A stretch of 64,000 bases of DNA from Ranitomeya imitator (lineage: Eukaryota), in NCBI RefSeq assembly GCF_032444005.1, contig NC_091284.1, forward strand, positions 181,102,001 to 181,166,000, in the 5' to 3' direction. How positions within the stretch are numbered: position 1 is the stretch's first letter; each line of letters starts with the position of its first letter. Under the pieces are notes generated by a model. That model saw nothing but the letters and a program-made list of their open reading frames with translations, searched no databases and had not been told where the DNA came from. The position numbers and the translations under genes were made by a program. Positions 9,085-64,000 of this stretch are shown here, one piece after another.

Positions 9085-9227
9085 AAAATTTTCTGTTATA
9101 TCCTGTTGTCATGGCTGTGAACTCCCAGAACAAATAATTATAATAATAAAGAATTCATCATTGGATACAAGACTTCTCTACTTTTTTCTTATAAGAGTGC
9201 TGGAGGTTGTTCTATTACATTGTACTA

Positions 9228-9241
9228 AATTTTAGTATATA
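9228..9241. repeat. Right copy of the 14-bp TSD
   Basis: AATTTTAGTATATA, same as 15-28. Confidence 0.8.
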
Positions 9242-44987: not shown

Positions 44988-45250
44988 GGTAATCATGTAA
45001 TTCAACCCCTGAACTGAACTACCTTGCATGTCTTTTTACTCCATTCAATATCGTCAAGCTTCATGAATGGTAATTATGTCATTCAACCCCTAAACTGAAC
45101 AACCTTGCATGTCTTTTTACTCCATTAAATATCAGCAAGCATCCTGAATGGTAATCATGTCATTCAACCCCTGAACTGAACTAGCTTGCATGTCTTTTTA
45201 CTCCATTCAATGTCAGCAAGCATCCTGAATGGTAATCTTGTCATTCAACT
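44988..45250. repeat. 81-bp tandem repeat (3+ units)
   Basis: GGTAATCATGTCATTCAACCCC at 44988, 45069, 45150 and 45231. Confidence 0.88.
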
Positions 45251-46170
45251 CCTTTGCTAGAATTCATCAGTTAAGGTACCGTCACACTAGACGATTTTAC
45301 AACGAGAACGACAACGATCCGACCAAAATAAGATCGCTGGAACGTCGCTGTTTAGGTCGCTGCAGAGATGCCAAACACACCAACCTACGAACGATGCTGG
45401 AGCGATATAGTGACGTAACAGCGACTCACAGATCGTCCTCGCTAGTCGTTTGCTCAGTGTCACACAGCAAGAGTGTAACGATCTAACGATGCAGACGTAG
45501 CCAGATAGGTGTGTTTTCTGCACAGGGAGACACCCAGGATGTGACGTTACGGCGTCCCGGAATATAAACCGCAACTCTACAGCGATTGATTCATATTGTT
45601 GGAGCGCTGTGTCTTCACGGTCTTCTGCCTTTCCAGCGTCCTGTTCGGAACGATCCTTCGCCAGCTACGATCCTCTTCTCCCGTGGACGTTCTGTCTAGA
45701 ACGTATTCTACTGCAGGCGTCTTCATCGTTTCTTTTCTTGCTCATCAACGGTATGAAATGTCTTTCAGTTGTTTGTTTCTTTTGTGTATAGTTATGGCTA
45801 TTCAATAATGTTTATCTATGTATATGGTGTAATGATGGATAAAACACCTCCGGCAGCCATCTTGTGCATCTGGCAAGCAGACGCACAAGATGGAGGCATT
45901 ACTATGCGATTTGCAAACTCAGTTGCGCTGTCTGCCAATTTTGCACACACCATATGGAAAGGTAAACTAGCTGTCTGCCAATTTTGCACACACTATATGG
46001 AAAGGTTAACTAATTCTCTTGTGTCTGCCTTGGCTGGCCCTGGCGTGCTCCGCTAGTAAATAAAACAGCACACAACTTAAAGGAACGAAATTTTTTTTTT
46101 TTTAGAAACTGAACTGTTTTTTTTTTTTTTTCAACAAAACACTACAGAAAAACAGAAAAAAAAAACATTT

Positions 46171-48381
46171 TTAACGCCCGCGCGCCAAAAGGTGTCGCAG
46201 CGTGCGTCCATGTTGCTGCACTTGATGCTGCAGCAGCACTACTGTGCGCTCCAAGAGCGCTACTGTCCGCTCCAGTCCCTCTTGTTTGGCCAGCAGCTCT
46301 CTCACAGTGTCCGGTTCTGTAGATCGAAGATAGAATAAAAGTCTTTTTTTTTTGTCCTGTCCCAGAGGTCTTTTTTTTATTGGTTGCATTTTATTAGTCG
46401 CTGTCAAATGTGACATCCCACCGATAACCCCTCCCACTGTCTGTATACTTACGGAGAAGGGACGCCTGTTGTCCATCACTGGAGCTGCTGACCACCCATC
46501 CCCTGTCTCGGGCCAGAGTTCCCGGAGCTAAAAGTAATCAAAATCATATCTGTTTAACAATTGAACTCGCTGTGGGGAACCGCTCGCAGTTTATCGTCAC
46601 TTACGAATGCTCGCCTCTGGGGAGAATGATGCCGAGCCGGGGGAGGAAGATGGGTAGCGGAAGGGCGGAGTAGTGGACTGCGGTGGGGTTACTGCATCTG
46701 TAATGTATACAATATTTCAGCTCACCTCTTATGTCCCATATGCCGTTATAATTTTGAAATGAATGATGGATAACTTACGTGACGGTCCAGCTTGTGGGCT
46801 GCTGCTGCTGCTGCTGGAAGATGTGGGGGAGGATAGTACCCTCTGTAGCCGGCGGCGTCTCTCTACACAAAAATAAAAGAAACACCATGTTTAGACAACA
46901 AAAGTACAGAGCTGTAGACATCACAATAAAACTAGACAATATTGACAGCAAAAGTTAGGAGCCTGAAATGAATGATGGATAACTTACGTGACGGTCCAGC
47001 TTGTGGGCTGCTGCTGGCCGCTGTGGTGGAGGTCAGTGCCCTCTGGTGCCGGCGGCGTCTTTCTACACAAAAATATAAAAAAAAAAAATCGCCATGTTTA
47101 GACAACAAAAGTACAGAGCTGTAGACATCACAATAAAACTAGACAACATTGACAGCAAAAGTTAGGAGCCTATCGAAATTCGGCAGCATCTGTAATGTAT
47201 TCTATATTTCTGCTCCCCTGTAAAGTCCCATATGCAGTTATAAAATTGAAATGAATGATGGATAACTTACGTGACGGTCCAGGCTGTGGGCTGCTGCTGG
47301 CCGCTGTGGTGGAGGCCAGTGCCCTCTGGTGCCGGCGGCGTCTTTCTACACAAAAATATAAAAAAAAGAAATCGCCATGTTTAGACAACAAAAGTACAGA
47401 GCTGTAGACATCACAATAAAACTAGACAACATTGACAGCAAAAGTTAGGAGCCTATCGAAATTCGGCAGCATCTGTAATGTATTCTATATTTCTGCTCCC
47501 CTGTAAAGTCCCATATGCAGTTATAAAATTGAAATGAATGATGGATAACTTACGTGACGGTCCAGGCTGTGGCCTGCTGCTGGCCGCTGTGGTGGAGGCC
47601 AGTGCCCTCTGGTGCCGGCGGCGTCTCTCTACACAAAAAAATTAAAAAAAAGAAATCGCCATGTTTAGACAACAAAAGTACAGAGCTGTAGAAAAAAAAA
47701 AAAAAAAAGAGGCCATTTGCGGGAAGGAGTAAAAATCAATTTTGACAAGCTAAATGTAATTACATATATAGAACATAGGAAGCACCTCACGGCAGTGCAC
47801 GTCTCCTGTTTCCCCCTACTGGCAGTGCGAGCAGGGTTGCCAACCTCCACGTAATGATTTCAGGCCAATCGGGATTACAATTGCGGACATCCGTATAAAT
47901 TAAATATGGGGGGTGGAGATTATGGAATTCATGACCTGACCAATTTTTACGCGACAACGCATTTTTGCGCTTGGACACTATAGAAATTTGAAAAGAAAAT
48001 ATTAAATTTTTGTCCTCGTAAGTCCCGGACAAGTTGGCAACCACGGGCACGAGTCTCCCATTTCCCCCCGCTCGGTACCGTGCGTCTTCCAATTCCACCA
48101 TTCTGATACTTGCCTTGCTTTGCCTCCGCTCGCAAGTGTGCCAGATGGAGTGGCTGCTTATAGCGCAGGTCGGCCCACTTCTTGCGCAGTTGCAGCGCAC
48201 TGCGCCGGATGCTAAACCTCCTCTCCATCATTTCTGCAATGCGGCCCAGCACTGCATTCTTGTGCAAATTTGGGTGGGCAGGCCGGCTCCTCCGTCCCTC
48301 ATAGTCGAGGGCATCCATTCTGTCCACAAAAAAACGCACCTCGGCCTGCCCCAGAGGAGCACAGCGCTGTCTCGCCGCCAT
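46171..48381 (-). CDS. Predicted 8-exon Myb/SANT-like (trihelix-type) + coiled-coil protein, about 296 aa (copy A)
   Basis: Exons 48114-48381, 47554-47628, 47271-47345, 46988-47062, 46779-46862, 46605-46697, 46453-46527, 46171-46316; all introns phase 1; N-terminal F.DRMD...VLGRIAEMM...LQLRKKWADLR motif. Confidence 0.72.
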
Positions 48382-48671
48382 TTTCTAAAGATAGACGCTG
48401 TACGGCACCGCCTAACCACGCCCAGAGGAGGTCCTAGCTGCGGCGCGATCGGCATCGCTATAGCGTCTCTGATTATGCACAGCGTCGCGTTTGTGACGCC
48501 GGCTCCAGACATCCTTTTTTTTTTTTTGGCGTTCCCGTTACCAAGTCACAGCGTTTATTGTCTTGCTTTCAGTTTTGTAGTAGCTTGTATCGTAATTTTG
48601 GGATGTTAATGAGGTGCAGCTGTAGTGTTAAACGCTGCTTATTACACATGTAAATATAAATTTCCATTAAA

Positions 48672-48948
48672 TCCTATGTTCACATTTCTGTAGAACAGGG
48701 CAGCGTCTGAGATGCAACGCTGAACAGATATGTGAGCACATGCCCAACGCCGCTTTTTGTGACCCATGCATTAACTTTTCCATGGTTTTAGGGTCAGAAA
48801 AAAAACATCATGCATCGTCCTCTGTGTCCTGACGCATGATTCACAAAACGATAGGGCAACACATGTTATTTCAGGCCCCTAGGTAAAATATAGTGGCACA
48901 TGCATTGCCGTGGCTGCACCGAACAAAACGCTAATGTGAACTTTGCCT
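48672..48948. mobile_element. Degenerate Harbinger MITE between the Myb-like gene and the transposase
   Basis: Imperfect TIR ...GTTCACATT / AATGTGAAC... with TAA/TTA flanks. Confidence 0.45.
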
Positions 48949-49068
48949 TATAACAAAAAAAAAAAAAAAAAAAGATGTGTGAACACTATTTAACAGTATT
49001 GGTTGTCTTGTGTCACTTTAGCAAATCATATGTAATAATTATTTTTTATTGTGCTTTTTCAGGTTGCC

Positions 49069-50328
49069 ATGTCTCTTTCGGATGTACCTGCGATTGTAGC
49101 GGCTGCATTGCTGTTAGAAGCTCAGAACCAGCTGGAGGCTGAAGCGCGAAACAATCGTGCAAAGCGACAGCGCCGCATGTGGACCAGACAGTGGCTGCAG
49201 AAGAGGAATCAATTGTCCCACATGGGCCTAATCAGGGAACTGAAGGAGAACAACCCGCATGATTTCAAGAACTACCTGAGAATGTCCGAGGATTCATTTA
49301 ATTTCCTACTTGAAGCTGTGGAACCTTATATTAGGCGGCAAAATACAAGGATGCGAGCTGCTGTCCCTGTGGATGAGAGACTGGCTGTTACGCTCCGGTT
49401 CCTGGCGACTGGAAGGTCTATGCAAGACTTGCATTACTGCGCTGCGATTTCCCGAACCCTACTCAGCGTCATAATTCCGGAGACATGTAAAGCAATTATC
49501 TCTGCTTTACACCAAAATTACATGCCTTTCCCGGAGACCCCGGATGATTGGAAAGAGATTTCAAGGGGATTTCATGAGCAATGGCAGTTCCCTAATTGCG
49601 GGGGTGCCTTGGATGGGAAACATGTCCGCATCACCCAACCACCACACTCCGGCTCCTTTTATTATAACTATAAGGGTTATTTCAGCGTAATTCTGATGGC
49701 CCTCGTTAATGCGAACTACGAATTTGTAAGTGTGTCTGTAGGGATTAACGGGAGATTATCTGATGGCGGAGTTTTGGAGCTAACCGATTTTGGGGACCGC
49801 TTGAAAGAAAACAAACTGGCCTTGCCTCCCAACAGTGACACTACTGAAAACATGAACTTTGTGTTTGTCGGAGATGAGGCGTTCCCACTGCATCCCAACC
49901 TTTTGAAGCCATTCTCCCAGAAAACTCTGACACCTGAGCGGCGCATATTTAATTACCGGCTTTCGAGAGCTAGACGCGTTGTGGAGAATGCGTTTGGAAT
50001 CATGGCAAACCGATTTCGTGTTTTCCACACTGCAATGAACATGAAACTATCGTCTATAGACTCTGTGGTTCTTGCTTGTTGCGTCCTCCACAACTTTTTG
50101 CGCCGCCGTGATGCCACTGCATACAGCCCTCCACAGTATGTAGACTCTGTTGACCCTGCAAACGGGGATATAACCCAGGGAGAATGGCGTCTAGATGAGC
50201 ACAGGGTTTCTGGCCTGGAAAGTCTGGGATCCGGAAGGAACAATGATGACGCGACAAATTGCAGGGAAAAATACTGTGACTTTTTCAATGGTCCAGGGGC
50301 TGTCTCATGGCAGCACCAACAATTGTAG
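49069..50328 (+). CDS. Harbinger (HARBI1-like, DDE_Tnp_4-type) transposase, 419 aa from the ATG at 49069, intact
   Basis: FKNYLRMS, ERLAVTLRFLATG, GALDGKH, FVGDEAF, RVVENAFG; a splice acceptor (TTTTTCAG at 49055-49062) suggests a 5'-UTR intron. Confidence 0.95.
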   Translation: MSLSDVPAIVAAALLLEAQNQLEAEARNNRAKRQRRMWTRQWLQKRNQLSHMGLIRELKENNPHDFKNYLRMSEDSFNFLLEAVEPYIRRQNTRMRAAVPVDERLAVTLRFLATGRSMQDLHYCAAISRTLLSVIIPETCKAIISALHQNYMPFPETPDDWKEISRGFHEQWQFPNCGGALDGKHVRITQPPHSGSFYYNYKGYFSVILMALVNANYEFVSVSVGINGRLSDGGVLELTDFGDRLKENKLALPPNSDTTENMNFVFVGDEAFPLHPNLLKPFSQKTLTPERRIFNYRLSRARRVVENAFGIMANRFRVFHTAMNMKLSSIDSVVLACCVLHNFLRRRDATAYSPPQYVDSVDPANGDITQGEWRLDEHRVSGLESLGSGRNNDDATNCREKYCDFFNGPGAVSWQHQQL

Positions 50329-50571
50329 CGCAACTGTCGGCATATCTTTTACCATTTATTAGGGATTACATTTGTTTTTGTTCATCCGCTCTCGTGTACC
50401 ATTCTTTTTAGAACCCAACCAATTTCTTTGTCAAGTAACAATGTCAACATAACGATATATTGATTTATGTACATTGTCTTGTTCTTTTTATTCCATTCCA
50501 ATTAAAATATTGAACTATGAAAATACTCTACTTCTGTATCAAACATATGAACCATGGGAATCAACAACCTC

Positions 50572-50705
50572 NNNNNNNNNNNNNNNNNNNNNNNNNNNNN
50601 NNNNNNNNNNNNNNNNNNNNNNNNNNNNNNNNNNNNNNNNNNNNNNNNNNNNNNNNNNNNNNNNNNNNNNNNNNNNNNNNNNNNNNNNNNNNNNNNNNNN
50701 NNNNN
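50572..50705. other. Run of 134 N
   Basis: Seen directly; mirrored by 146 N at 57835-57980. Confidence 0.99.
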
Positions 50706-50983
50706 AGCACTCCCAAAGTTTCATGTGAAAAAAAAAATGGAGATTTAATCGACCCACATCACTGCGCGACGTTTCAGCTCACTGAACCTTTTTCAAGGCT
50801 CGAAAAAGGCTCAGGGAGCCGAAACGTCGAGCAGTGATGTGGGTCGATGAAATCTCCATATTTTTTTCACATGAAACTTTGGGAGTGCTGCCTTCTTTTT
50901 CCTATTTTGTATATATGTTGGATAAATGCTTGGACCATTCTATCCAGGGGGCTAGGCACCCGCTATTGGTGAGCATTGTGCTG

Positions 50984-50986
<3 letters not shown>
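50706..50986. mobile_element. Inverted pair of PLE-end fragments with back-to-back hammerhead-like motifs, followed by (TA)n at 50987-51039
   Basis: About 92-bp arms (50706-50797 and 50799-50889) mirror each other; each arm starts UYGAAAAA-stem II-GAAACGUC. Confidence 0.65.
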
Positions 50987-51042
<56 letters not shown>

Positions 51043-51303
51043 GATTATAATGCATTTGGTATTGTACAGTATGCATGTCCACTTTGCATATTGCCCACCC
51101 ACATAGTATTTTGCCCATCCAGAGAGCCACGTAGTATGGAGACAAATTTGAAAAATATATATATTTTATTTGTTTTCACATGACATTTTCATGTGGCACA
51201 AGGATTAATTACCGGGCGTCAGGCCAATGACTGCAGGGCAGTAGGCAGAGTGGATTATGGACGTTATAAAACTGAAGTCTATAGTGTTTTCAAGACAAGA
51301 TCC

Positions 51304-52684
51304 CTACAAATTTTGATAGTAGGTGCCCATCTCGCTGTACCGGTCCGTGGACGTAGGAGGTCCTTGTGAAAAGTCTGCAAAAGAAGGAGGTGCAGGTGGT
51401 GTCCAGAACTGAGAATGATGTGGGCCTGGTCTGCGGACAGGAGTGCTGTGCATGGGCTCCTGTGGTGGTCCCAAATAAAACTGGCTACTGGGCTGACGCT
51501 CAGTGATGTTCAACATAGATGTGTCGCTCAGTTTTCCAGCGGCTGCCGCGTTCAGAACGTCAAACATCAATCGCTCCGCGTGAGATCGTTGGGTAACGTC
51601 CAATTTTTTTAACCGTTCCTCAACCAAGGTTGGGAATGCGGAGAGCTGGGTTGCCGCATGCTTGGACAAGATGTTGTTAGCCATTGCCAGGAGATCCACA
51701 GGTGTCCCCGCTGTCGACTTTCTTTTGCGAGATGGCCGCTGTCGACGTCTCTGATCCTCGAGACACGGGCTTCTGGAGGACTGATGGGACTGGACATCGT
51801 TCCCTTCTGGTCTTTCCCGCTGTTGAAGAGGCACCTGCGATTCAAGCAAAAAGAAAAAAAAATTAAAAGTCAATAACATACAAACAACTCAGCCTAGAGC
51901 CCCACCTCTCCAACACCTCTATTCCTGTTCATGGGAAGCTATGAGGAACTAGGTAGCAAACCACAGGGGTTACAGAGCTTTCAGAGCTGGGCTGAACTAC
52001 ATTGGGCAGCAATACTGTATGTACAAATGTGCGGAAGACACAATATGTTAATGTATTTATCTTTATGTTATAGACTTTTGAAATTATTAAAAATGCATTT
52101 AAAGGAGGGGGGAGTACTGTTTGGACATACTTCTCAGAACAGGAAGTGACAACTGTTATTAACAGGGGGATTAAACATGAAAAATGTGAATCATTATTAT
52201 TGGAAACCATGCAGTCTCATAAACCTACAAGACACACGGCATGCTACTAGAAGGGAAGCTAGGGGGTACTTACATGCTCGTCCGGAGACTCGGGCAGGTT
52301 CTCTTCAGGCGATGGTGCACATATGCTTGTGACAGTCTGGCACGGACGAGGAATTTCCTGGTCCCGAGTGAACGCCAGCAGGTCATAGTACCACAACTTG
52401 GGCACATAGACGTCGTCAGTTCCGGCCCCAGACTTCAGCGACTTTTCCACCTTGTTCAACTCTTTTTTGTAGACTGTGCGGAGAGCCTGGATTTTTTTAC
52501 GCACAATGTGTTCATCCACCGTCTCAGTGGGATGATGCTCCTTGTAGATGGCCACCAGCTTCTCATACGCATCTTTCTTTTTGTAGCGGTTGCTGTAATC
52601 CGCCGACTTTATCTTCCACAAGCAGGGCAGGGAGCGGTACATCTCTATGAGTGCCCGAACACAGTCTTGTTCATTGGCAGACAT
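51304..52684 (-). CDS. Two-exon MADF-domain DNA-binding protein with BESS-like C-terminal motif, 313 aa (copy A)
   Basis: Exon 1 52274-52684 (LIEMYRSLPCLW...YSNRYKKKDAYEKL...KIQALRTVYKKE...PKLWYY); phase-0 GT-AG intron; exon 2 51304-51834. Confidence 0.88.
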
Positions 52685-52929
52685 CTAAAAAAAGAATAAA
52701 AACATGAAGCAACATCAAGCAAGAAAGTTGTGGCCCCTGTGCCTTTCCTAATGTGAGCAGCCTTCTCTTGTATGGGATGGGCCGTGCGCTCTTTCCTTTT
52801 GGTAGCCACCATTTTAGTGATGGAATGGTTCGTATGTTTTTTTTATAATATTAATACCAATTTTGGGGCTTGAAAATGGCAGATTAAAAAAAAAAAAAAA
52901 AAATTACCATGAAAGATTTAATAAGAACG

Positions 52930-53200
52930 CTGATGAGTTCAAAATCTCCAACCAGGTCGCTCACAAGAAGCTAGAGAACGATGTAAAGGTCTCGATTTAC
53001 AACCACGACGCTCACGAGATGTTAAATCAATACGGATCAGAATTCCAGATTTCAAAACAAGACGCTCACGAGAGGTTATAAAACAAAGACGCTGCAAAGA
53101 TCTTGATTTCCAACCAGAACGCTTACGAGATGGAGAATGAACACGATGCAGAGTTGTGGATTTCCAACCTATTGCAAGATGCTCGTAGTTGAAGTACGCA
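52930..53200. repeat. Degenerate tandem repeat, unit about 55 bp (5 units)
   Basis: ATTTC(C/A)AACCAGGACGCTCACGAGA-like motif recurring; translates as ISNQDAHE-like repeats. Confidence 0.65.
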
Positions 53201-53329
53201 CAAGTGATTGAACAGTTGACTCAAGCTTTTTATATCGGAACCTTGCTATAGAACCTACCTATAGATGATCCCGCTGTGGCCTATCACAGTTCACAGGGAG
53301 ACATCACACCCACTCCATTGTATAACGTT

Positions 53330-53990
53330 ATGGCGTCACCATTTTTTTTTTATTAAATAAAGTAAAAGCCTTTTTTTGTAATGGCTGTTGTAATCCCCAT
53401 GTAGGCTGTTGCGACAGATGGCATCTCCTTTTGTAAAGTCATGTTATGGCGTCACCTTTTTTAATGTCATTATGTCCTCCCCTTTGTCATTGTAATGTAT
53501 TATAAAGACCCCCTTTATTTATAATGTAGACACCACATCACAGACTATTGCGACACATGGCATCTCCTTTGTAAAGTCATGTCCTGAGGTCACTTTTTTA
53601 ATGTTATAATGTAATGTAAAGGCGTCTCCTTTTGTAATTGTTATGTATTGTAAAGACCTCTTTTATGGAATGTACACACCACCTCCCAGGCTTTATCAGG
53701 ACAGAGGGAGTCACCTTTTGTAATAGCGTATCCTTTTTTTTATTTTAGGTAATACTTTATCACTTGGCGGTCCCCTATCCTTTGTAATTGCATATTTTAA
53801 TATTAATATATTAATATATATTAATATATTGTATTAATCAGGCGATATGTATTGGACCTAGGCTATCATAGTATGGGAAGTTTATGTGATCGTGGTAAAT
53901 TGATATTTTCCAAGAAAACGTTTAAAATTTAAATCTATTACGGGCGTCACTGCAATGTATTGTAAAGGCGTCTCCTTTTTAATGTACAAC
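53330..53990. repeat. Subterminal repeated motif GGC(G/A)TC(A/T)CC in AT-rich spacers
   Basis: At least 7 copies visible, mirrored at about 54526-55186. Confidence 0.7.
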
Positions 53991-55831
53991 GCCTACCTGG
54001 CTAGAGCAAGACGCTGCGACGGCCCCTATGATCGTTGCTGGCGTCGTTGCTTTTGGTGTCAAACACAACGATACACGCCAATCGAACGACAAAATAAAGT
54101 TCTGAACTTTCAGCGCCGACTAGCGACATCACAGCGGGATCCAGATCGCTGCTGCGTGTCAAACACAACGATATCGCTAACGAGGACGCTGTTACGTCAC
54201 AGATCGTTGTCGTTCTCGTTGTAAAATCGTCTAGTGTGACGGTACCTTTACATGGTTCCCAGTACTTAAGGTACCGTCACACTAGACGATTTTACAACGA
54301 GAACGACAACGATCTGTGACGTAACAGCGTCCTCGTTAGCGATATCGTTGTGTTTGACACGCAGCAGCGATCTGGATCCCGCTGTGATGTCGCTAGTCGG
54401 CGCTGAAAGTTCAGAACTTTATTTTGTCGTTCGATTGGCGTGTATCGTTGTGTTTGACACCAAAAGCAACGACGCCAGCAACGATCATAGGGGCCGTCGC
54501 AGCGTCTTGCTCTAGCCAGGTAGGCGTTGTACATTAAAAAGGAGACGCCTTTACAATACATTGCAGTGACGCCCGTAATAGATTTAAATTTTAAACGTTT
54601 TCTTGGAAAATATCAATTTACCACGATCACATAAACTTCCCATACTATGATAGCCTAGGTCCAATACATATCGCCTGATTAATACAATATATTAATATAT
54701 ATTAATATATTAATATTAAAATATGCAATTACAAAGGATAGGGGACCGCCAAGTGATAAAGTATTACCTAAAATAAAAAAAAGGATACGCTATTACAAAA
54801 GGTGACTCCCTCTGTCCTGATAAAGCCTGGGAGGTGGTGTGTACATTCCATAAAAGAGGTCTTTACAATACATAACAATTACAAAAGGAGACGCCTTTAC
54901 ATTACATTATAACATTAAAAAAGTGACCTCAGGACATGACTTTACAAAGGAGATGCCATGTGTCGCAATAGTCTGTGATGTGGTGTCTACATTATAAATA
55001 AAGGGGGTCTTTATAATACATTACAATGACAAAGGGGAGGACATAATGACATTAAAAAAGGTGACGCCATAACATGACTTTACAAAAGGAGATGCCATCT
55101 GTCGCAACAGCCTACATGGGGATTACAACAGCCATTACAAAAAAAGGCTTTTACTTTATTTAATAAAAAAAAAATGGTGACGCCATAACGTTATACAATG
55201 GAGTGGGTGTGATGTCTCCCTGTGAACTGTGATAGGCCACAGCGGGATCATCTATAGGTAGGTTCTATAGCAAGGTTCCGATATAAAAAGCTTGAGTCAA
55301 CTGTTCAATCACTTGTGCGTACTTCAACTACGAGCATCTTGCAATAGGTTGGAAATCCACAACTCTGCATCGTGTTCATTCTCCATCTCGTAAGCGTTCT
55401 GGTTGGAAATCAAGATCTTTGCAGCGTCTTTGTTTTATAACCTCTCGTGAGCGTCTTGTTTTGAAATCTGGAATTCTGATCCGTATTGATTTAACATCTC
55501 GTGAGCGTCGTGGTTGTAAATCGAGACCTTTACATCGTTCTCTAGCTTCTTGTGAGCGACCTGGTTGGAGATTTTGAACTCATCAGCGTTCTTATTAAAT
55601 CTTTCATGGTAATTTTTTTTTTTTTTTTTTAATCTGCCATTTTCAAGCCCCAAAATTGGTATTAATATTATAAAAAAAACATACGAACCATTCCATCACT
55701 AAAATGGTGGCTACCAAAAGGAAAGAGCGCACGGCCCATCCCATACAAGAGAAGGCTGCTCACATTAGGAAAGGCACAGGGGCCACAACTTTCTTGCTTG
55801 ATGTTGCTTCATGTTTTTATTCTTTTTTTAG

Positions 55832-57212
55832 ATGTCTGCCAATGAACAAGACTGTGTTCGGGCACTCATAGAGATGTACCGCTCCCTGCCCTGCTTGTGG
55901 AAGATAAAGTCGGCGGATTACAGCAACCGCTACAAAAAGAAAGATGCGTATGAGAAGCTGGTGGCCATCTACAAGGAGCATCATCCCACTGAGACGGTGG
56001 ATGAACACATTGTGCGTAAAAAAATCCAGGCTCTCCGCACAGTCTACAAAAAAGAGTTGAACAAGGTGGAAAAGTCGCTGAAGTCTGGGGCCGGAACTGA
56101 CGACGTCTATGTGCCCAAGTTGTGGTACTATGACCTGCTGGCGTTCACTCGGGACCAGGAAATTCCTCGTCCGTGCCAGACTGTCACAAGCATATGTGCA
56201 CCATCGCCTGAAGAGAACCTGCCCGAGTCTCCGGACGAGCATGTAAGTACCCCCTAGCTTCCCTTCTAGTAGCATGCCGTGTGTCTTGTAGGTTTATGAG
56301 ACTGCATGGTTTCCAATAATAATGATTCACATTTTTCATGTTTAATCCCCCTGTTAATAACAGTTGTCACTTCCTGTTCTGAGAAGTATGTCCAAACAGT
56401 ACTCCCCCCTCCTTTAAATGCATTTTTAATAATTTCAAAAGTCTATAACATAAAGATAAATACATTAACATATTGTGTCTTCCGCACATTTGTACATACA
56501 GTATTGCTGCCCAATGTAGTTCAGCCCAGCTCTGAAAGCTCTGTAACCCCTGTGGTTTGCTACCTAGTTCCTCATAGCTTCCCATGAACAGGAATAGAGG
56601 TGTTGGAGAGGTGGGGCTCTAGGCTGAGTTGTTTGTATGTTATTGACTTTTAATTTTTTTTTCTTTTTGCTTGAATCGCAGGTGCCTCTTCAACAGCGGG
56701 AAAGACCAGAAGGGAACGATGTCCAGTCCCATCAGTCCTCCAGAAGCCCGTGTCTCGAGGATCAGAGACGTCGACAGCGGCCATCTCGCAAAAGAAAGTC
56801 GACAGCGGGGACACCTGTGGATCTCCTGGCAATGGCTAACAACATCTTGTCCAAGCATGCGGCAACCCAGCTCTCCGCATTCCCAACCTTGGTTGAGGAA
56901 CGGTTAAAAAAATTGGACGTTACCCAACGATCTCACGCGGAGCGATTGATGTTTGACGTTCTGAACGCGGCAGCCGCTGGAAAACTGAGCGACACATCTA
57001 TGTTGAACATCACTGAGCGTCAGCCCAGTAGCCAGTTTTATTTGGGACCACCACAGGAGCCCATGCACAGCACTCCTGTCCGCAGACCAGGCCCACATCA
57101 TTCTCAGTTCTGGACACCACCTGCACCTCCTTCTTTTGCAGACTTTTCACAAGGACCTCCTACGTCCACGGACCGGTACAGCGAGATGGGCACCTACTAT
57201 CAAAATTTGTAG
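55832..57212 (+). CDS. Two-exon MADF/BESS-like protein (copy B)
   Basis: Exons 55832-56242 and 56682-57212; CAT|GTAAGT donor and CGCAG|GTG acceptor. Confidence 0.88.
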
Positions 57213-57473
57213 GGATCTTGTCTTGAAAACACTATAGACTTCAGTTTTATAACGTCCATAATCCACTCTGCCTACTGCCCTGCAGTCATTGGCCTGACGC
57301 CCGGTAATTAATCCTTGTGCCACATGAAAATGTCATGTGAAAACAAATAAAATATATATATTTTTCAAATTTGTCTCCATACTACGTGGCTCTCTGGATG
57401 GGCAAAATACTATGTGGGTGGGCAATATGCAAAGTGGACATGCATACTGTACAATACCAAATGCATTATAATC

Positions 57474-57553
<80 letters not shown>

Positions 57554-57556
<3 letters not shown>

Positions 57557-57834
57557 CAGCACAATGCTCACCAATAGCGGGTGCCTAGCCCCCTGGATAG
57601 AATGGTCCAAGCATTTATCCAACATATATACAAAATAGGAAAAAGAAGGCAGCACTCCCAAAGTTTCATGTGAAAAAAATATGGAGATTTCATCGACCCA
57701 CATCACTGCTCGACGTTTCGGCTCCCTGAGCCTTTTTCGAGCCTTGAAAAAGGTTCAGTGAGCTGAAACGTCGCGCAGTGATGTGGGTCGATTAAATCTC
57801 CATTTTTTTTTTCACATGAAACTTTGGGAGTGCT
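57554..57834. mobile_element. Inverted PLE-end pair with hammerhead-like motifs (copy B); (TA)n at 57477-57553
   Basis: Mirror of 50706-50986. Confidence 0.65.
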
Positions 57835-57980
57835 NNNNNNNNNNNNNNNNNNNNNNNNNNNNNNNNNNNNNNNNNNNNNNNNNNNNNNNNNNNNNNNNNN
57901 NNNNNNNNNNNNNNNNNNNNNNNNNNNNNNNNNNNNNNNNNNNNNNNNNNNNNNNNNNNNNNNNNNNNNNNNNNNNNNNN
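57835..57980. other. Run of 146 N
   Basis: Seen directly. Confidence 0.99.
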
Positions 57981-58223
57981 GAGGTTGTTGATTCCCATGG
58001 TTCATATGTTTGATACAGAAGTAGAGTATTTTCATAGTTCAATATTTTAATTGGAATGGAATAAAAAGAACAAGACAATGTACATAAATCAATATATCGT
58101 TATGTTGACATTGTTACTTGACAAAGAAATTGGTTGGGTTCTAAAAAGAATGGTACACGAGAGCGGATGAACAAAAACAAATGTAATCCCTAATAAATGG
58201 TAAAAGATATGCCGACAGTTGCG

Positions 58224-59483
58224 CTACAATTGTTGGTGCTGCCATGAGACAGCCCCTGGACCATTGAAAAAGTCACAGTATTTTTCCCTGCAATTTGTCG
58301 CGTCATCATTGTTCCTTCCGGATCCCAGACTTTCCAGGCCAGAAACCCTGTGCTCATCTAGACGCCATTCTCCCTGGGTTATATCCCCGTTTGCAGGGTC
58401 AACAGAGTCTACATACTGTGGAGGGCTGTATGCAGTGGCATCACGGCGGCGCAAAAAGTTGTGGAGGACGCAACAAGCAAGAACCACAGAGTCTATAGAC
58501 GATAGTTTCATGTTCATTGCAGTGTGGAAAACACGAAATCGGTTTGCCATGATTCCAAACGCATTCTCCACAACGCGTCTAGCTCTCGAAAGCCGGTAAT
58601 TAAATATGCGCCGCTCAGGTGTCAGAGTTTTCTGGGAGAATGGCTTCAAAAGGTTGGGATGCAGTGGGAACGCCTCATCTCCGACAAACACAAAGTTCAT
58701 GTTTTCAGTAGTGTCACTGTTGGGAGGCAAGGCCAGTTTGTTTTCTTTCAAGCGGTCCCCAAAATCGGTTAGCTCCAAAACTCCGCCATCAGATAATCTC
58801 CCGTTAATCCCTACAGACACACTTACAAATTCGTAGTTCGCATTAACGAGGGCCATCAGAATTACGCTGAAATAACCCTTATAGTTATAATAAAAGGAGC
58901 CGGAGTGTGGTGGTTGGGTGATGCGGACATGTTTCCCATCCAAGGCACCCCCGCAATTAGGGAACTGCCATTGCTCATGAAATCCCCTTGAAATCTCTTT
59001 CCAATCATCCGGGGTCTCTGGGAAAGGCATGTAATTTTGGTGTAAAGCAGAGATAATTGCTTTACATGTCTCCGGAATTATGACGCTGAGTAGGGTTCGG
59101 GAAATCGCAGCGCAGTAATGCAAGTCTTGCATAGACCTTCCAGTCGCCAGGAACCGGAGCGTAACAGCCAGTCTCTCATCCACAGGGACAGCAGCTCGCA
59201 TCCTTGTATTTTGCCGCCTAATATAAGGTTCCACAGCTTCAAGTAGGAAATTAAATGAATCCTCGGACATTCTCAGGTAGTTCTTGAAATCATGCGGGTT
59301 GTTCTCCTTCAGTTCCCTGATTAGGCCCATGTGGGACAATTGATTCCTCTTCTGCAGCCACTGTCTGGTCCACATGCGGCGCTGTCGCTTTGCACGATTG
59401 TTTCGCGCTTCAGCCTCCAGCTGGTTCTGAGCTTCTAACAGCAATGCAGCCGCTACAATCGCAGGTACATCCGAAAGAGACAT
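58224..59483 (-). CDS. Harbinger transposase (copy B), intact
   Basis: Protein identical to copy A; one synonymous difference seen (CCG at 49531-49533 vs CCA, position 59019). Confidence 0.95.
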   Translation of the reverse strand: MSLSDVPAIVAAALLLEAQNQLEAEARNNRAKRQRRMWTRQWLQKRNQLSHMGLIRELKENNPHDFKNYLRMSEDSFNFLLEAVEPYIRRQNTRMRAAVPVDERLAVTLRFLATGRSMQDLHYCAAISRTLLSVIIPETCKAIISALHQNYMPFPETPDDWKEISRGFHEQWQFPNCGGALDGKHVRITQPPHSGSFYYNYKGYFSVILMALVNANYEFVSVSVGINGRLSDGGVLELTDFGDRLKENKLALPPNSDTTENMNFVFVGDEAFPLHPNLLKPFSQKTLTPERRIFNYRLSRARRVVENAFGIMANRFRVFHTAMNMKLSSIDSVVLACCVLHNFLRRRDATAYSPPQYVDSVDPANGDITQGEWRLDEHRVSGLESLGSGRNNDDATNCREKYCDFFNGPGAVSWQHQQL

Positions 59484-60170
59484 GGCAACCTGAAAAAGCA
59501 CAATAAAAAATAATTATTACATATGATTTGCTAAAGTGACACAAGACAACCAATACTGTTAAATAGTGTTCACACATCTTTTTTTTTTTTTTTTTTTGTT
59601 ATAAGGCAAAGTTCACATTAGCGTTTTGTTCGGTGCAGCCACGGCAATGCATGTGCCACTATATTTTACCTAGGGGCCTGAAATAACATGTGTTGCCCTA
59701 TCGTTTTGTGAATCATGCGTCAGGACACAGAGGACGATGCATGATGTTTTTTTTCTGACCCTAAAACCATGGAAAAGTTAATGCATGGGTCACAAAAAGC
59801 GGCGTTGGGCATGTGCTCACATATCTGTTCAGCGTTGCATCTCAGACGCTGCCCTGTTCTACAGAAATGTGAACATAGGATTTAATGGAAATTTATATTT
59901 ACATGTGTAATAAGCAGCGTTTAACACTACAGCTGCACCTCATTAACATCCCAAAATTACGATACAAGCTACTACAAAACTGAAAGCAAGACAATAAACG
60001 CTGTGACTTGGTAACGGGAACGCCAAAAAAAAAAAAAGGATGTCTGGAGCCGGCGTCACAAACGCGACGCTGTGCATAATCAGAGACGCTATAGCGATGC
60101 CGATCGCGCCGCAGCTAGGACCTCCTCTGGGCGTGGTTAGGCGGTGCCGTACAGCGTCTATCTTTAGAAA

Positions 60171-62381
60171 ATGGCGGCGAGACAGCGCTGTGCTCCTCTG
60201 GGGCAGGCCGAGGTGCGTTTTTTTGTGGACAGAATGGATGCCCTCGACTATGAGGGACGGAGGAGCCGGCCTGCCCACCCAAATTTGCACAAGAATGCAG
60301 TGCTGGGCCGCATTGCAGAAATGATGGAGAGGAGGTTTAGCATCCGGCGCAGTGCGCTGCAACTGCGCAAGAAGTGGGCCGACCTGCGCTATAAGCAGCC
60401 ACTCCATCTGGCACACTTGCGAGCGGAGGCAAAGCAAGGCAAGTATCAGAATGGTGGAATTGGAAGACGCACGGTACCGAGCGGGGGGAAATGGGAGACT
60501 CGTGCCCGTGGTTGCCAACTTGTCCGGGACTTACGAGGACAAAAATTTAATATTTTCTTTTCAAATTTCTATAGTGTCCAAGCGCAAAAATGCGTTGTCG
60601 CGTAAAAATTGGTCAGGTCATGAATTCCATAATCTCCACCCCCCATATTTAATTTATACGGATGTCCGCAATTGTAATCCCGATTGGCCTGAAATCATTA
60701 CGTGGAGGTTGGCAACCCTGCTCGCACTGCCAGTAGGGGGAAACAGGAGACGTGCACTGCCGTGAGGTGCTTCCTATGTTCTATATATGTAATTACATTT
60801 AGCTTGTCAAAATTGATTTTTACTCCTTCCCGCAAATGGCCTCTTTTTTTTTTTTTTTTTCTACAGCTCTGTACTTTTGTTGTCTAAACATGGCGATTTC
60901 TTTTTTTTAATTTTTTTGTGTAGAGAGACGCCGCCGGCACCAGAGGGCACTGGCCTCCACCACAGCGGCCAGCAGCAGGCCACAGCCTGGACCGTCACGT
61001 AAGTTATCCATCATTCATTTCAATTTTATAACTGCATATGGGACTTTACAGGGGAGCAGAAATATAGAATACATTACAGATGCTGCCGAATTTCGATAGG
61101 CTCCTAACTTTTGCTGTCAATGTTGTCTAGTTTTATTGTGATGTCTACAGCTCTGTACTTTTGTTGTCTAAACATGGCGATTTCTTTTTTTTATATTTTT
61201 GTGTAGAAAGACGCCGCCGGCACCAGAGGGCACTGGCCTCCACCACAGCGGCCAGCAGCAGCCCACAGCCTGGACCGTCACGTAAGTTATCCATCATTCA
61301 TTTCAATTTTATAACTGCATATGGGACTTTACAGGGGAGCAGAAATATAGAATACATTACAGATGCTGCCGAATTTCGATAGGCTCCTAACTTTTGCTGT
61401 CAATGTTGTCTAGTTTTATTGTGATGTCTACAGCTCTGTACTTTTGTTGTCTAAACATGGCGATTTTTTTTTTTTATATTTTTGTGTAGAAAGACGCCGC
61501 CGGCACCAGAGGGCACTGACCTCCACCACAGCGGCCAGCAGCAGCCCACAAGCTGGACCGTCACGTAAGTTATCCATCATTCATTTCAGGCTCCTAACTT
61601 TTGCTGTCAATATTGTCTAGTTTTATTGTGATGTCTACAGCTCTGTACTTTTGTTGTCTAAACATGGTGTTTCTTTTATTTTTGTGTAGAGAGACGCCGC
61701 CGGCTACAGAGGGTACTATCCTCCCCCACATCTTCCAGCAGCAGCAGCAGCAGCCCACAAGCTGGACCGTCACGTAAGTTATCCATCATTCATTTCAAAA
61801 TTATAACGGCATATGGGACATAAGAGGTGAGCTGAAATATTGTATACATTACAGATGCAGTAACCCCACCGCAGTCCACTACTCCGCCCTTCCGCTACCC
61901 ATCTTCCTCCCCCGGCTCGGCATCATTCTCCCCAGAGGCGAGCATTCGTAAGTGACGATAAACTGCGAGCGGTTCCCCACAGCGAGTTCAATTGTTAAAC
62001 AGATATGATTTTGATTACTTTTAGCTCCGGGAACTCTGGCCCGAGACAGGGGATGGGTGGTCAGCAGCTCCAGTGATGGACAACAGGCGTCCCTTCTCCG
62101 TAAGTATACAGACAGTGGGAGGGGTTATCGGTGGGATGTCACATTTGACAGCGACTAATAAAATGCAACCAATAAAAAAAAGACCTCTGGGACAGGACAA
62201 AAAAAAAAGACTTTTATTCTATCTTCGATCTACAGAACCGGACACTGTGAGAGAGCTGCTGGCCAAACAAGAGGGACTGGAGCGGACAGTAGCGCTCTTG
62301 GAGCGCACAGTAGTGCTGCTGCAGCATCAAGTGCAGCAACATGGACGCACGCTGCGACACCTTTTGGCGCGCGGGCGTTAA
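60171..62381 (+). CDS. Predicted 8-exon Myb/SANT-like + coiled-coil protein (copy B)
   Basis: Exons 60171-60438, 60924-60998, 61207-61281, 61490-61564, 61690-61773, 61855-61947, 62025-62099, 62236-62381; 891 nt, one open frame; first donor AG|GCAAGT, all others GTAAGT. Confidence 0.72.
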
Positions 62382-64000
62382 AAATGTTTTTTTTTTCTGT
62401 TTTTCTGTAGTGTTTTGTTGAAAAAAAAAAAAAAACAGTTCAGTTTCTAAAAAAAAAAAAATTTCGTTCCTTTAAGTTGTGTGCTGTTTTATTTACTAGC
62501 GGAGCACGCCAGGGCCAGCCAAGGCAGACACAAGAGAATTAGTTAACCTTTCCATATAGTGTGTGCAAAATTGGCAGACAGCTAGTTTACCTTTCCATAT
62601 GGTGTGTGCAAAATTGGCAGACAGCGCAACTGAGTTTGCAAATCGCATAGTAATGCCTCCATCTTGTGCGTCTGCTTGCCAGATGCACAAGATGGCTGCC
62701 GGAGGTGTTTTATCCATCATTACACCATATACATAGATAAACATTATTGAATAGCCATAACTATACACAAAAGAAACAAACAACTGAAAGACATTTCATA
62801 CCGTTGATGAGCAAGAAAAGAAACGATGAAGACGCCTGCAGTAGAATACGTTCTAGACAGAACGTCCACGGGAGAAGAGGATCGTAGCTGGCGAAGGATC
62901 GTTCCGAACAGGACGCTGGAAAGGCAGAAGACCGTGAAGACACAGCGCTCCAACAATATGAATCAATCGCTGTAGAGTTGCGGTTTATATTCCGGGACGC
63001 CGTAACGTCACATCCTGGGTGTCTCCCTGTGCAGAAAACACACCTATCTGGCTACGTCTGCATCGTTAGATCGTTACACTCTTGCTGTGTGACACTGAGC
63101 AAACGACTAGCGAGGACGATCTGTGAGTCGCTGTTACGTCACTATATCGCTCCAGCATCGTTCGTAGGTTGGTGTGTTTGGCATCTCTGCAGCGACCTAA
63201 ACAGCGACGTTCCAGCGATCTTATTTTGGTCGGATCGTTGTCGTTCTCGTTGTAAAATCGTCTAGTGTGACGGTACCTTTACTGTTGTAGCTCCAGGGGG
63301 GGATCTCTGTAGATGTTTATCTCAGGAGAGGTGATATATTATAGAGATGTCAGGACTGCGTCTTTGATCATCACATTAGCTAAGCATCAGGCCAAAGGGC
63401 AGTTACTCCATGGCAGTTAGTCAGGGCAGGAGTCAGGTAACCCACACTCTGCTCTCCCTTTTATCCATGTGCTTTATTCCTATCCTCCTATATTCCCTTG
63501 CCATCCAAATTCACCGCCCAATCCCCCTTCATCACAACTCCTATACATCAGTCCCTCTATACTTTCCTCTCCCATGTACAGCTCCCATGCACTTCTCACC
63601 TTCCTGAAAAACGTCAGTCCATCTTGCACAAACACACTGCACAAAAAATCTTCGTACAATTTCAAAAACTTCTTGCTTTTTATCTTCCTACTCCTACTGA
63701 TTTCGGCGGACATCTCCCCCAACCCCGGCATTATTGCCCTGGGTGGCATATGGGGCCTGGTGGGCAGAGGGGGCCCGCATCGGGCCCCGTCTCATTTCCT
63801 CACCGGGCCCCTACTGGCAGGCGAAACCGGGCCCTTAGCGGCGCTGCAGCAGTTTAATGCTATTGATGAGCGGGCCCGTGCCTGCATGTCAATAGTTAAC
63901 AGCCGCCAGCCAATTAGAGGCTGGCAGCTGTTAGGGGTCGAGTTCCCGCTTCTGCACAGGGGGAATCTCGAGCCACTTCCGCTGCGGTCTCCCATTCTTG

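What the first reader, a model, noticed from the sequence alone, without database searches (positions are those of the whole stretch)
45274..54247. Three-gene Harbinger: one transposase with two unrelated, intron-containing DNA-binding partners
Seen: between perfect 46-bp TIRs lie (i) an intact DDE transposase, (ii) a convergent 2-exon MADF + BESS-like gene, and (iii) a divergent predicted 8-exon gene with a Myb/SANT-like N-terminus, an Arg/Ser/Pro-rich middle and a C-terminal coiled coil. All splice sites join into open frames in both copies. Established: Harbingers typically need a transposase plus one Myb/SANT or MADF protein; extra ORFs have been reported only occasionally. Inference: this may be a young, active three-component system in which the second protein is a cofactor, an anti-silencing factor or an autoregulator.
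Basis: partly seen in the sequence, partly recalled or inferred. Interest (0 to 1): 0.8.

Follow-up and report, generated by a model that had tools for sequence, protein, structure and literature searches.

The report
Three-gene Harbinger transposon in poison frog
A very young, transcribed Harbinger jumping gene of the poison frog Ranitomeya imitator carries three genes, not the textbook two: its cutting enzyme plus two different DNA-binding helper proteins, a set that related frog elements as far away as Xenopus also keep.

Summary
Window 45274-54247 is an 8,974-bp PIF/Harbinger element with perfect 46-bp TIRs and a TTA duplication on both sides. A second, inverted copy lies 15 bp away at 54269-63278 and differs by one substitution.

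It holds three genes:
- an intact 419-aa DDE_Tnp_4 transposase;
- a 2-exon, 313-aa MADF gene;
- an 8-exon, 296-aa gene with a trihelix Myb/SANT domain, a disordered Arg/Ser/Pro repeat middle and a C-terminal heptad helix.

The assembly gap lies between the convergent 3' ends of transposase and MADF, so no reading frame crosses it.

RNA contigs confirm the last three introns of gene 3 and a fourth joint. They do not show its first (GC-AG) intron, which rests on conserved intron position and phase in Xenopus and on RefSeq models of close paralogues.

New here: the transposase mRNA starts at the left end and splices across 3.3 kb, so gene 3 sits antisense inside the transposase's 5'UTR intron.

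The same trio occurs in other orders in Anomaloglossus, in another R. imitator lineage, and inside a TIR-bounded X. laevis element. Gene 3 is therefore a conserved transposon gene, not a passenger. Its role is inferred only.

This scan had already noted three- and four-gene Harbingers elsewhere in this genome.

The parts
45271..45273 (.). left target-site duplication TTA of copy 1
45274..45319 (+). left TIR, 46 bp, perfect
45274..45750 (+). transposase 5' non-coding exon. It reaches at least to the element's first base and has 4 short uORFs.
   Evidence: Joint 45750|49063 in X1. Matching loose ends in X2 and X10.
45410..45423 (+). subterminal 14-mer GTGACGTAACAGCG. A weaker copy lies at 45541-45554 and the mirror copy at 54187-54200. 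Candidate protein-binding site.
   Evidence: 8 matches against 0.14 expected. Six lie in subterminal places of the two copies; two 2-mismatch matches lie elsewhere in the window.
45751..49062 (+). transposase 5'UTR intron (GTATGA..TTTCAG), 3,312 nt, which contains all of gene 3 on the other strand
46171..46316 (-). gene 3 exon 8: heptad helix and stop codon. It holds a 21-nt (one heptad) tandem duplication at 46235-46274.
46453..46527 (-). gene 3 exon 7
   Evidence: RNA joints on both sides
46605..46697 (-). gene 3 exon 6
   Evidence: RNA joints on both sides
46779..46862 (-). gene 3 exon 5, the oldest unit of the repeat-exon array
46988..47062 (-). gene 3 exon 4, a 75-nt repeat exon. Its inclusion is not shown by RNA.
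47271..47345 (-). gene 3 exon 3, a 75-nt repeat exon. Its inclusion is not shown by RNA.
47554..47628 (-). gene 3 exon 2, a 75-nt repeat exon. RNA contigs join it or exon 3 to exon 5.
48114..48381 (-). gene 3 exon 1: trihelix Myb/SANT-like domain, ATG at 48381, GC donor AAG|GCAAGT after 48114
49069..50328 (+). transposase CDS, 419 aa, DDE_Tnp_4, D182/D269/E306
50501..50517 (+). ATTAAA signal and probable transposase mRNA 3' end, 55 nt before the gap
   Evidence: Contigs end at 50502-50517; an adapter follows at 50517 in X2.
50572..50705 (.). assembly gap in the intergenic stretch between the convergent 3' ends. Left unfilled.
50706..50889 (.). 184-bp palindrome that abuts the gap (29-nt perfect outer arms)
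51304..51834 (-). MADF gene exon 2: basic cluster RRRQRPSRKRKS, BESS-like motif, Pro-rich tail, stop codon
52274..52684 (-). MADF gene exon 1 (MADF domain)
52924..53980 (.). arrays of short repeats upstream of the MADF gene: 51-57-bp period at 52924-53169, and six GGCGTCACCTTTT-type units at 53314-53980
54202..54247 (-). right TIR
54248..54250 (.). right target-site duplication TTA of copy 1
54269..63278 (-). copy 2, inverted: MADF 55832-57212 (+), gap 57835-57980, transposase 58224-59483 (-), gene 3 60171-62381 (+)

Best explanation
This is an autonomous, recently mobile PIF/Harbinger DNA transposon of Ranitomeya imitator. Its standard gene set is three genes.

(1) A DDE transposase. Its mRNA starts at the left end and is spliced over a 3.3-kb 5'UTR intron.
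(2) A MADF-domain protein with a basic cluster and a BESS-like motif.
(3) A NAIF1/MSANTD-type trihelix protein with a disordered, repeat-prone middle and a C-terminal coiled-coil helix. It is encoded antisense inside the transposase's intron.

Shown: the anatomy, the intact frames, transcription and most splices, and conservation of the trio across anuran Harbinger lineages in three different gene orders.

Inferred, by analogy with Harbinger3_DR and rice Ping/Pong: one Myb-like partner binds subterminal sites, brings the transposase into the nucleus and recruits it to the ends. Here that job would be shared by two DNA-binding partners. Each would read its own subterminal motif (candidates GTGACGTAACAGCG and ACAACGAT). 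The coiled coil of gene 3 would dimerise and help pair sites or ends.
For: Anatomy:
- TIR, TSD and DDE_Tnp_4.
- Two copies that differ by one base.
- 19 member sequences in the transposase's 90% cluster.

RNA:
- Spliced contigs from three studies support the transposase 5' intron.
- Contigs from two to three runs each support four gene-3 joints.

Gene 3 is a real protein family:
- The exon-1 domain finds 44 proteins; every named one looked up (28 of the 30 checked were frog proteins, the rest unnamed) is a frog protein.
- 14 of 20 aligned sequences (19 homologues plus this exon) hit Myb_DNA-bind_5.
- The AF2 model has pLDDT 88. Its best structural matches are TSNARE1, FSBP, NAIF1, MYPOP, MSANTD3/4 and GT-1.
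- A full-length paralogue folds as trihelix, disorder, then a long helix.
- 10 of 13 a/d positions of the C-terminal segment are hydrophobic.
- Paralogues differ by whole heptads.

The trio is linked elsewhere:
- Anomaloglossus: Tnp> G3> <MADF (probably).
- Another R. imitator lineage has the same order.
- X. laevis element L002:5911-11499 has perfect TIRs and TTAA flanks and holds Tnp> <MADF G3>.

Intron 1:
- Its position and phase are identical in X. laevis.
- RefSeq models P0207, P0206 and P0156 join the exons at the same point.

Cis motifs:
- The subterminal motif is enriched and faces inward at both ends.
- Its core recurs near the Xenopus element's left end.
Against: - No RNA joint was seen for gene 3's first intron. 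Contigs of three runs read through the GC donor.
- Several RefSeq models of paralogues (P0209-P0213) lack the Myb exon.
- The joint into exon 5 comes from an exon-2/3-type donor, so exons 3 and 4 may be skipped, or the contigs may have collapsed the repeats.
- The public annotation calls no gene 3 beside identical or 89%-identical transposases.
- This exon's own Pfam scores are below the curated cut-offs.
- No test of DNA binding, protein interaction or need for transposition exists.
- No dN/dS could be computed, because no DNA of paralogues could be fetched.
- Repbase and Dfam could not be searched.
Confidence: 0.8

Rival explanations
1. Gene 3 is a conserved transposon gene but not a transposition cofactor. 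It would act as a regulator, for example a self-limiting repressor that competes for end binding, or a factor that deals with host chromatin or silencing. Its antisense nesting in the transposase intron would couple the two transcripts.
For: - It overlaps the transposase pre-mRNA in antisense.
- Its depth in RNA contigs is much lower than that of the transposase.
- A read-through product of exon 1 would be a 144-aa DNA-binding domain without the helix.
- Insect and nematode Harbingers manage with the MADF protein alone (PMC9710019, PMC13668399).
Against: - The nesting is peculiar to this family. Relatives keep gene 3 in other places and orientations, so nesting cannot be its conserved mode of action.
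- Its fold is that of the canonical vertebrate Harbinger partner derivatives NAIF1 and TSNARE1.
Confidence: 0.3
2. In this particular family gene 3 is split. The Myb exon is not spliced to the downstream exons because of the weak GC donor. The element would then make a short Myb-only product and, from another start, a repeat-plus-helix product.
For: - No exon 1-2 joint in four runs, and read-through contigs in three.
- An X2 contig joins exon 5 to an upstream exon that is not in this window.
- RefSeq models P0209-P0213 start elsewhere.
Against: - AAG|GCAAGT is the usual form of working GC donors (my knowledge).
- The intron's position and phase are conserved with Xenopus.
- P0207, P0206, P0156 and P0208 are joined at that point.
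- The read-through contigs can be transposase pre-mRNA, whose intron covers this stretch, or DNA.
- Contigs drop rare forms.
Confidence: 0.3
3. Gene 3 is a passenger: a host gene fragment or a separate nested element caught inside the Harbinger, without a function for it.
For: - The public annotation does not call it beside the closest transposase copies.
- Its middle part evolves freely, and all four differences among the repeat exons change the protein.
Against: - No inverted repeats of its own surround it, only A/T runs.
- It has introns and no transposase of its own.
- The same family is linked to transposase and MADF in four lineages and lies within the TIRs of the Xenopus element.
- The N-terminal domain and the C-terminal helix are conserved while the middle varies.
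Confidence: 0.07

Closest known systems
Harbinger3_DR of zebrafish (transposase + Myb-like protein; Sinzelle et al. 2008, as summarised in PMC9710019)
   Same: DDE_Tnp_4-type transposase, TIRs, 3-bp TWA duplication, and a separate trihelix/Myb-like protein gene. Subterminal short motifs are likely partner binding sites.
   Different: Two genes there, three here. This element adds a MADF gene. Its Myb-like gene has 8 exons with an expanded exon array and a C-terminal coiled coil. The transposase has a 3.3-kb 5'UTR intron.
Insect and nematode PIF/Harbinger elements with a MADF partner (PMC9710019; PMC13668399)
   Same: Transposase plus MADF gene. The nearest non-frog relatives of this transposase are insect proteins at about 54% identity.
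   Different: Those papers describe them with the MADF gene as the only partner. No trihelix/coiled-coil gene is reported.
HARBI1-NAIF1 and the MSANTD3/MSANTD4/TSNARE1 genes (domesticated Harbinger genes; PMC9392472)
   Same: The gene-3 N-terminal domain gives its best fold matches to TSNARE1, NAIF1, MSANTD3 and MSANTD4. Its layout, an N-terminal Myb/SANT domain with a C-terminal coiled coil, is that implied by MSANTD4's full name (my knowledge).
   Different: Those are single-copy host genes. Gene 3 is multi-copy and lies within TIRs. Sequence identity is only 12-24%, and Foldseek E-values are weak (0.2-1) although probabilities are high.
Rice Ping/Pong (ORF1 Myb-like + TPase)
   Same: It needs both a Myb-like protein and the transposase (as cited in PMC9710019).
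   Different: Plant lineage, two genes, no MADF gene.

Membership tests
PIF/Harbinger DNA transposons | DDE_Tnp_4 / Plant_tran-type transposase with the catalytic D, D, E | tested here: met
   PF13359 E=4.6e-32, full profile 1-158. D182, D269 and E306 lie in conserved or invariant columns.
PIF/Harbinger DNA transposons | Terminal inverted repeats and a 3-bp TWA target-site duplication | tested here: met
   46-bp perfect TIRs. TTA on both sides of both copies.
PIF/Harbinger DNA transposons | A second gene for a Myb/SANT/MADF-type DNA-binding protein | tested here: met
   Two such genes: MADF and a trihelix protein.
PIF/Harbinger DNA transposons | Mobility that depends on transposase plus partner | not testable with these tools
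   Only indirect signs: near-identical copies, each with its own TSD.
MADF domain proteins (PF10545) | Match above Pfam's gathering score | tested here: met
   57.7 bits against a cut-off of 22.
BESS motif (PF02944) | Match to the BESS profile | tested here: not met
   No hit at E<=5 in this protein or in 9 relatives. Support is only a motif seen by eye (SAFPTLVEERLKKL..AERLMFDVL) and a UniRef label on P0124.
Myb/SANT-like trihelix domains (Myb_DNA-bind_4 / _5; NAIF1, MSANTD type) | Match above Pfam's gathering score | tested here: inconclusive
   This exon scores 18-19 bits against cut-offs of 27 and 21.7. 14 of 20 aligned sequences match PF13873 at E<=0.01, best 1.9e-5.
Myb/SANT-like trihelix domains (Myb_DNA-bind_4 / _5; NAIF1, MSANTD type) | Three-helix fold like GT-1 or NAIF1 | tested here: met
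   AF2 pLDDT 87.9 with helices 12-24, 37-56 and 62-88. Top PDB matches are GT-1 and Zeste. Top Swiss-Prot model matches are TSNARE1, FSBP, NAIF1, MYPOP and MSANTD3/4, probability 0.9-1.0, TM 0.6-0.68.
Coiled-coil C-terminus | Heptad periodicity over several heptads and a helical prediction | tested here: met
   10 of 13 a/d positions are L/I/V/M/F in one register. The paralogue's helix 188-226 has pLDDT 85-90. Length differences between paralogues are whole heptads. Oligomerisation itself was not tested.

The most novel reading that the evidence does not exclude
Frog Harbingers form a three-component transposition system. The MADF protein and the trihelix/coiled-coil protein would both be needed. 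Each would read a different subterminal motif, and the coiled coil would pair sites or ends. That would be a division of labour not known for any cut-and-paste DNA transposon. It could also explain why vertebrates domesticated several kinds of Harbinger partner genes (NAIF1, MSANTD3/4, TSNARE1).
Probability: 0.3. Interest if true: 0.75.

Novelty: new variant of a known kind. Interest (0 to 1): 0.6.

Why it matters
PIF/Harbinger elements are defined in the literature by two genes (PMC9710019, PMC13668399, PMC9392472). Here one element family carries both known kinds of partner at once, a MADF protein and a NAIF1-like trihelix protein. The set is kept in frogs as distant as poison frogs and Xenopus, even though the gene order is reshuffled.

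That makes a concrete question testable: what does a second DNA-binding partner add to a cut-and-paste transposase?

The copies here look intact, so native proteins are available for the test without any reconstruction.

The element also gives a living transposon counterpart for the MSANTD4-type layout (Myb/SANT domain plus coiled coil). It shows a transposase gene whose 5'UTR intron houses another transposon gene on the opposite strand.

Tried and rejected
- Nested element: a search for inverted repeats around gene 3 gave only A/T runs. Rejected.
- Fourth gene: a six-frame profile search of the whole window with the gene-3 domain found one copy per element and nothing else. This family has no fourth paralogue, unlike other families noted by the scan.
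- BESS: Pfam found nothing.
- Profile search of solved structures by sequence: no meaningful hit, best E=0.09.
- Loose ends of RNA contigs (alternative upstream exons) were sought in the window and none is there. They come from other copies.
- DNA of paralogous loci for dN/dS or TIR checks: the frog assemblies were too large to be served. Only X. laevis DNA came back.
- X. laevis P0147 and P0186 were not on record.
- Literature searches for three-ORF or third-ORF Harbingers, or for Harbinger + MADF + Xenopus, gave nothing relevant.
- The full spliced gene-3 and MADF proteins of this window could not be handed to the search and fold tools, because they have no single reference. Exon pieces and database paralogues were used instead.
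- The gap was left as it is. Only distances were compared: another place that encodes the identical transposase has its MADF gene 277 nt further away, which is too little to hide a gene.


Full report
WHAT IS THERE

The stretch 45274-54247 (8,974 bp) is bounded by perfect 46-bp inverted repeats, 45274-45319 and 54202-54247. TTA flanks it on both sides.

A second copy lies inverted at 54269-63278. It has its own TTA duplications and sits only 15 bp from the first. The copies differ by:
- one substitution (49533 G against A, synonymous in the transposase);
- the length of a (TA)n run;
- the estimated length of an assembly gap.

All three coding sequences are identical in the two copies.

The transposase is 100% identical to an annotated protein of Ranitomeya imitator. 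That protein stands for a cluster of 19 sequences, with sister families at 98, 89 and about 70% identity. So the genome is that of a poison frog and the family is multi-copy.

THE GAP (asked to be tested first)

N runs lie at 50572-50705 in copy 1 and at the mirrored place, 57835-57980, in copy 2.
- The transposase stop codon is at 50326-50328, 243 nt before the gap.
- The MADF stop codon is at 51304-51306, 598 nt beyond it.
- The only 'ORFs' across the gap are runs of X.
- RNA contigs of three runs end at 50502-50517, just after an ATTAAA at 50501. In one run a sequencing adapter follows. The transposase mRNA therefore probably ends 55 nt before the gap.

The gap is intergenic, between two convergent 3' ends, and no reading frame depends on it. 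Whether the two sides are contiguous cannot be told. A 184-bp palindrome (50706-50889) abuts the gap in both copies, which may be why assembly failed there. Elsewhere in the public annotation, the MADF gene beside an identical transposase lies 277 nt further away, so the missing part is short.

TRANSPOSASE

- The CDS is 49069-50328 and encodes 419 aa. It matches DDE_Tnp_4 over the full profile (E=4.6e-32).
- D182 (ALDGKH), D269 (GDEAF) and E306 (VENAFG) lie in conserved columns of an alignment with 12 relatives from frogs, insects, a shrimp, a sea slug and an acorn worm.
The joint is seen in X1, and loose ends in X2 and X10 carry exactly the letters of the other side.
- The transposase mRNA therefore starts at or before the left TIR. 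It has a non-coding first exon of about 477 nt with four short uORFs. It is spliced to a site 6 nt before the ATG.
- All of gene 3 lies inside that intron on the opposite strand.

MADF GENE

- On the minus strand: exon 1 is 52684-52274, the intron is 52273-51835 (GTAAGT..CAG) and exon 2 is 51834-51304. The product is 313 aa.
- The MADF domain scores 57.7 bits against a cut-off of 22.
- The junction (..SPDEH|VPLQQ..) is the one in the annotated relative P0121.
- The public annotation calls a 313-aa MADF gene of the same 1,381-nt span beside the identical transposase and beside the 89% sister family.
- Pfam finds no BESS motif in this protein or in nine relatives. 'BESS-like' rests on a pattern seen by eye and on a UniRef label of P0124.
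- This gene was not covered by the read-laying run.

GENE 3

The minus-strand model has eight exons:
- 48381-48114
- 47628-47554
- 47345-47271
- 47062-46988
- 46862-46779
- 46697-46605
- 46527-46453
- 46316-46171

It gives an open 296-aa frame, and all internal exons are in phase 1-1. Exons 2-4, each with its intron, form a 283-bp tandem array at 98% identity, and exon 5 is an older unit.

RNA evidence:
- GT-AG joints on the minus strand were seen for 46317-46452 (X1, X2), 46528-46604 (X1, X2, X10) and 46698-46778 (X1, X2).
- A further joint spans 46863-47553 (X1, X10). It links an exon-2/3-type donor to exon 5. Either exons 3 and 4 are skipped, or other copies have fewer units, or the k-mer contigs collapsed the repeats.
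- The first intron (donor AAG|GCAAGT, a GC donor, after 48114; acceptor before 47628) was not seen. Contigs of X1, X9 and X10 run through the donor.
- These read-through contigs may be transposase pre-mRNA, whose intron covers this stretch, or DNA.

Indirect support for the first intron is good:
- RefSeq models of close paralogues are joined at the same residue: P0156 in R. imitator, and P0206 and the full-length P0207 in R. variabilis. P0207 is about 72% identical to this N-terminal domain by my reading of the alignment.
- The X. laevis homologue P0157 has its first intron at the same codon and in the same phase, with a GT donor.
- Against this, models P0209-P0213 lack the Myb exon.

I put the chance that exon 1 is joined as modelled at about two in three.

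WHAT GENE 3 ENCODES

- Exon 1 alone finds 44 proteins at E<=0.001. Of the 30 looked up, 24 carry a source's name and 6 do not; every named one comes from a frog: Dendrobatidae, Aromobatidae, Hyperoliidae, Ranidae, Dicroglossidae, Eleutherodactylidae, Leptodactylidae and Pipidae.
- Of 20 aligned sequences (19 homologues plus this exon), 14 match Myb_DNA-bind_5 and 12 match Myb_DNA-bind_4. This exon itself stays under the cut-offs.
- The AF2 model of exon 1 has pLDDT 87.9 and a three- to four-helix bundle.
- Among solved structures it resembles GT-1 and Zeste most. Among Swiss-Prot models it resembles TSNARE1, FSBP, NAIF1, MYPOP and MSANTD3/4. Several of these are known domesticated Harbinger partner genes (PMC9392472).
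- The Atlas look-alikes are Myb_DNA-bind_5/4 clusters, including NAIF1 (a lead only).
- The full-length paralogue P0207 folds as trihelix (pLDDT about 90), then about 85 disordered residues, then one long helix at 188-226 (pLDDT 85-90).
- In this copy's last 47 residues, 10 of 13 a/d positions are hydrophobic in one register.
- Paralogues differ there by whole heptads. This copy has a 21-nt tandem duplication at 46235-46274.
- The middle part differs in each lineage and often holds its own tandem repeats.

IS GENE 3 PART OF THE TRANSPOSON?

- No inverted repeats of its own surround it.
- In Anomaloglossus baeobatrachus the homologue P0145 lies between a 418-aa DDE_Tnp_4 gene and a convergent 304-aa MADF gene. 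Two further loci there show the same spacing, with an unnamed 253-aa gene that I did not verify.
- In another R. imitator lineage, P0146 lies between a DDE_Tnp_4 gene and a MADF gene.
- In Xenopus laevis I could read the DNA:
  - L002:5911-11499 is bounded by 20-26-bp perfect inverted repeats, with TTAA on both flanks. That fits a TTA or TAA duplication.
  - It contains a decayed transposase (6260-7568, DDE_Tnp_4 E=2.9e-31).
  - It contains a decayed MADF gene on the other strand (8979-8024).
  - It contains P0157 (10001-10843).

The trio thus occurs in three orders:
- <G3 T> <M here;
- T> G3> <M in the two dendrobatoid lineages;
- T> <M G3> in Xenopus.

A gene that stays linked through such reshuffling, and lies inside the TIRs, is a transposon gene and not a passenger. 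This window's family has only one such gene per copy.

HOW IT LIKELY WORKS

Established for Harbinger3_DR and Ping/Pong, as summarised in PMC9710019: the Myb-like partner binds subterminal motifs, binds the transposase and is needed for its nuclear import and for transposition.

By inference, the frog elements split or double that role between a MADF protein and a trihelix/coiled-coil protein.
- All three proteins carry basic clusters: RAKRQRR in the transposase, RRRQRPSRKRKS in the MADF protein and RRRR in each repeat exon of gene 3.
- A 14-mer, GTGACGTAACAGCG, faces inward near both ends. It gives 8 matches in the window against 0.14 expected; six are subterminal in the two copies and two, each with 2 mismatches, lie elsewhere.
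- Its core GTGACGTA recurs twice near the left end of the Xenopus element.
- ACAACGAT is also concentrated at the ends.

These are candidate binding sites, nothing more. Which protein binds what, whether the helix dimerises, and whether gene 3 helps or restrains transposition are open.

Which of the two partners is ancestral is also open. The transposase's nearest non-frog relatives are insect proteins, whose elements use MADF. Yet the gene-3 fold is that of the vertebrate partner derivatives.

COMPARISON AND NOVELTY

The papers I could search describe Harbingers with two genes. None describes a MADF plus trihelix trio. Repbase and Dfam could not be searched, so a consensus annotated with three proteins may already exist there.

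This scan had already noted three- and four-gene Harbingers on other pieces of this genome, with follow-ups reaching Xenopus too. I saw those notes only after my own tests, and they agree.

I rate this a new variant of a known kind. It is a real, conserved departure from the two-gene rule, with two features special to this family: gene 3 nested antisense in the transposase's 5'UTR intron, and an expanded exon array.

Noticed in passing
window 45271-63281: Two copies that differ by one base lie tail to tail 15 bp apart, each with its own TTA duplication, and form an 18-kb near-perfect palindrome. This could be local re-insertion, gene conversion between the arms, or an assembly effect. Both arms carry a gap at the mirrored place.
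   Followed up: partly
window 50706-50889 (and mirrored in copy 2): A 184-bp palindrome with 29-nt perfect outer arms directly abuts the assembly gap. It may be a hairpin or MITE-like insert and the cause of the gap.
   Followed up: no
window 46964-47692 and 46755-47171: The tandem 283-bp units each hold one 75-nt phase-1 exon plus its intron. The close paralogues P0156 and P0207 have two and one such exons, so the array grew in this family. All four nucleotide differences among exons 2-4 change the protein.
   Followed up: partly
window 46235-46274; alignment A3 columns 380-405: The C-terminal helix of gene-3 proteins gains or loses whole heptads in different paralogues (for example LQGTAAR units in P0208 and P0209). 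This copy has a 21-nt duplication.
   Followed up: partly
window 45000-45253: An 81-bp tandem repeat (3.1 units, 91% matches) lies in the host DNA and ends about 20 bp left of the insertion.
   Followed up: no
window 52924-53980: Dense arrays of short direct repeats lie between the MADF start and the right end: a 51-57-bp period, and six GGCGTCACCTTTT-type units. They are possible promoter or binding arrays.
   Followed up: no
RNA contigs on window 46862 and 46476: Contigs that match exons 5-8 continue upstream into letters absent from this window. One reads as a possible alternative first exon with its own ATG. Other copies or isoforms may therefore lack the Myb exon.
   Followed up: partly
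protein P0213 (R. imitator): A RefSeq model starts with residues that look like the end of a MADF protein's BESS-like motif (QRTLAERLIMEAVNKG) and runs on into gene-3 repeat exons. It is a chimeric model or a rearranged family.
   Followed up: no
L002:5911-11499 (Xenopus laevis, CM030347.1): A 5.6-kb Harbinger with perfect 20-26-bp TIRs holds a decayed transposase, a decayed MADF gene and an annotated three-exon gene-3 homologue. Its ends share CAACGATC and GTGACGTA with the Ranitomeya element.
   Followed up: yes
window 15-9241: The scan lists another first-reader note here about a head-to-head Penelope-like element pair. I did not look at it.
   Followed up: no
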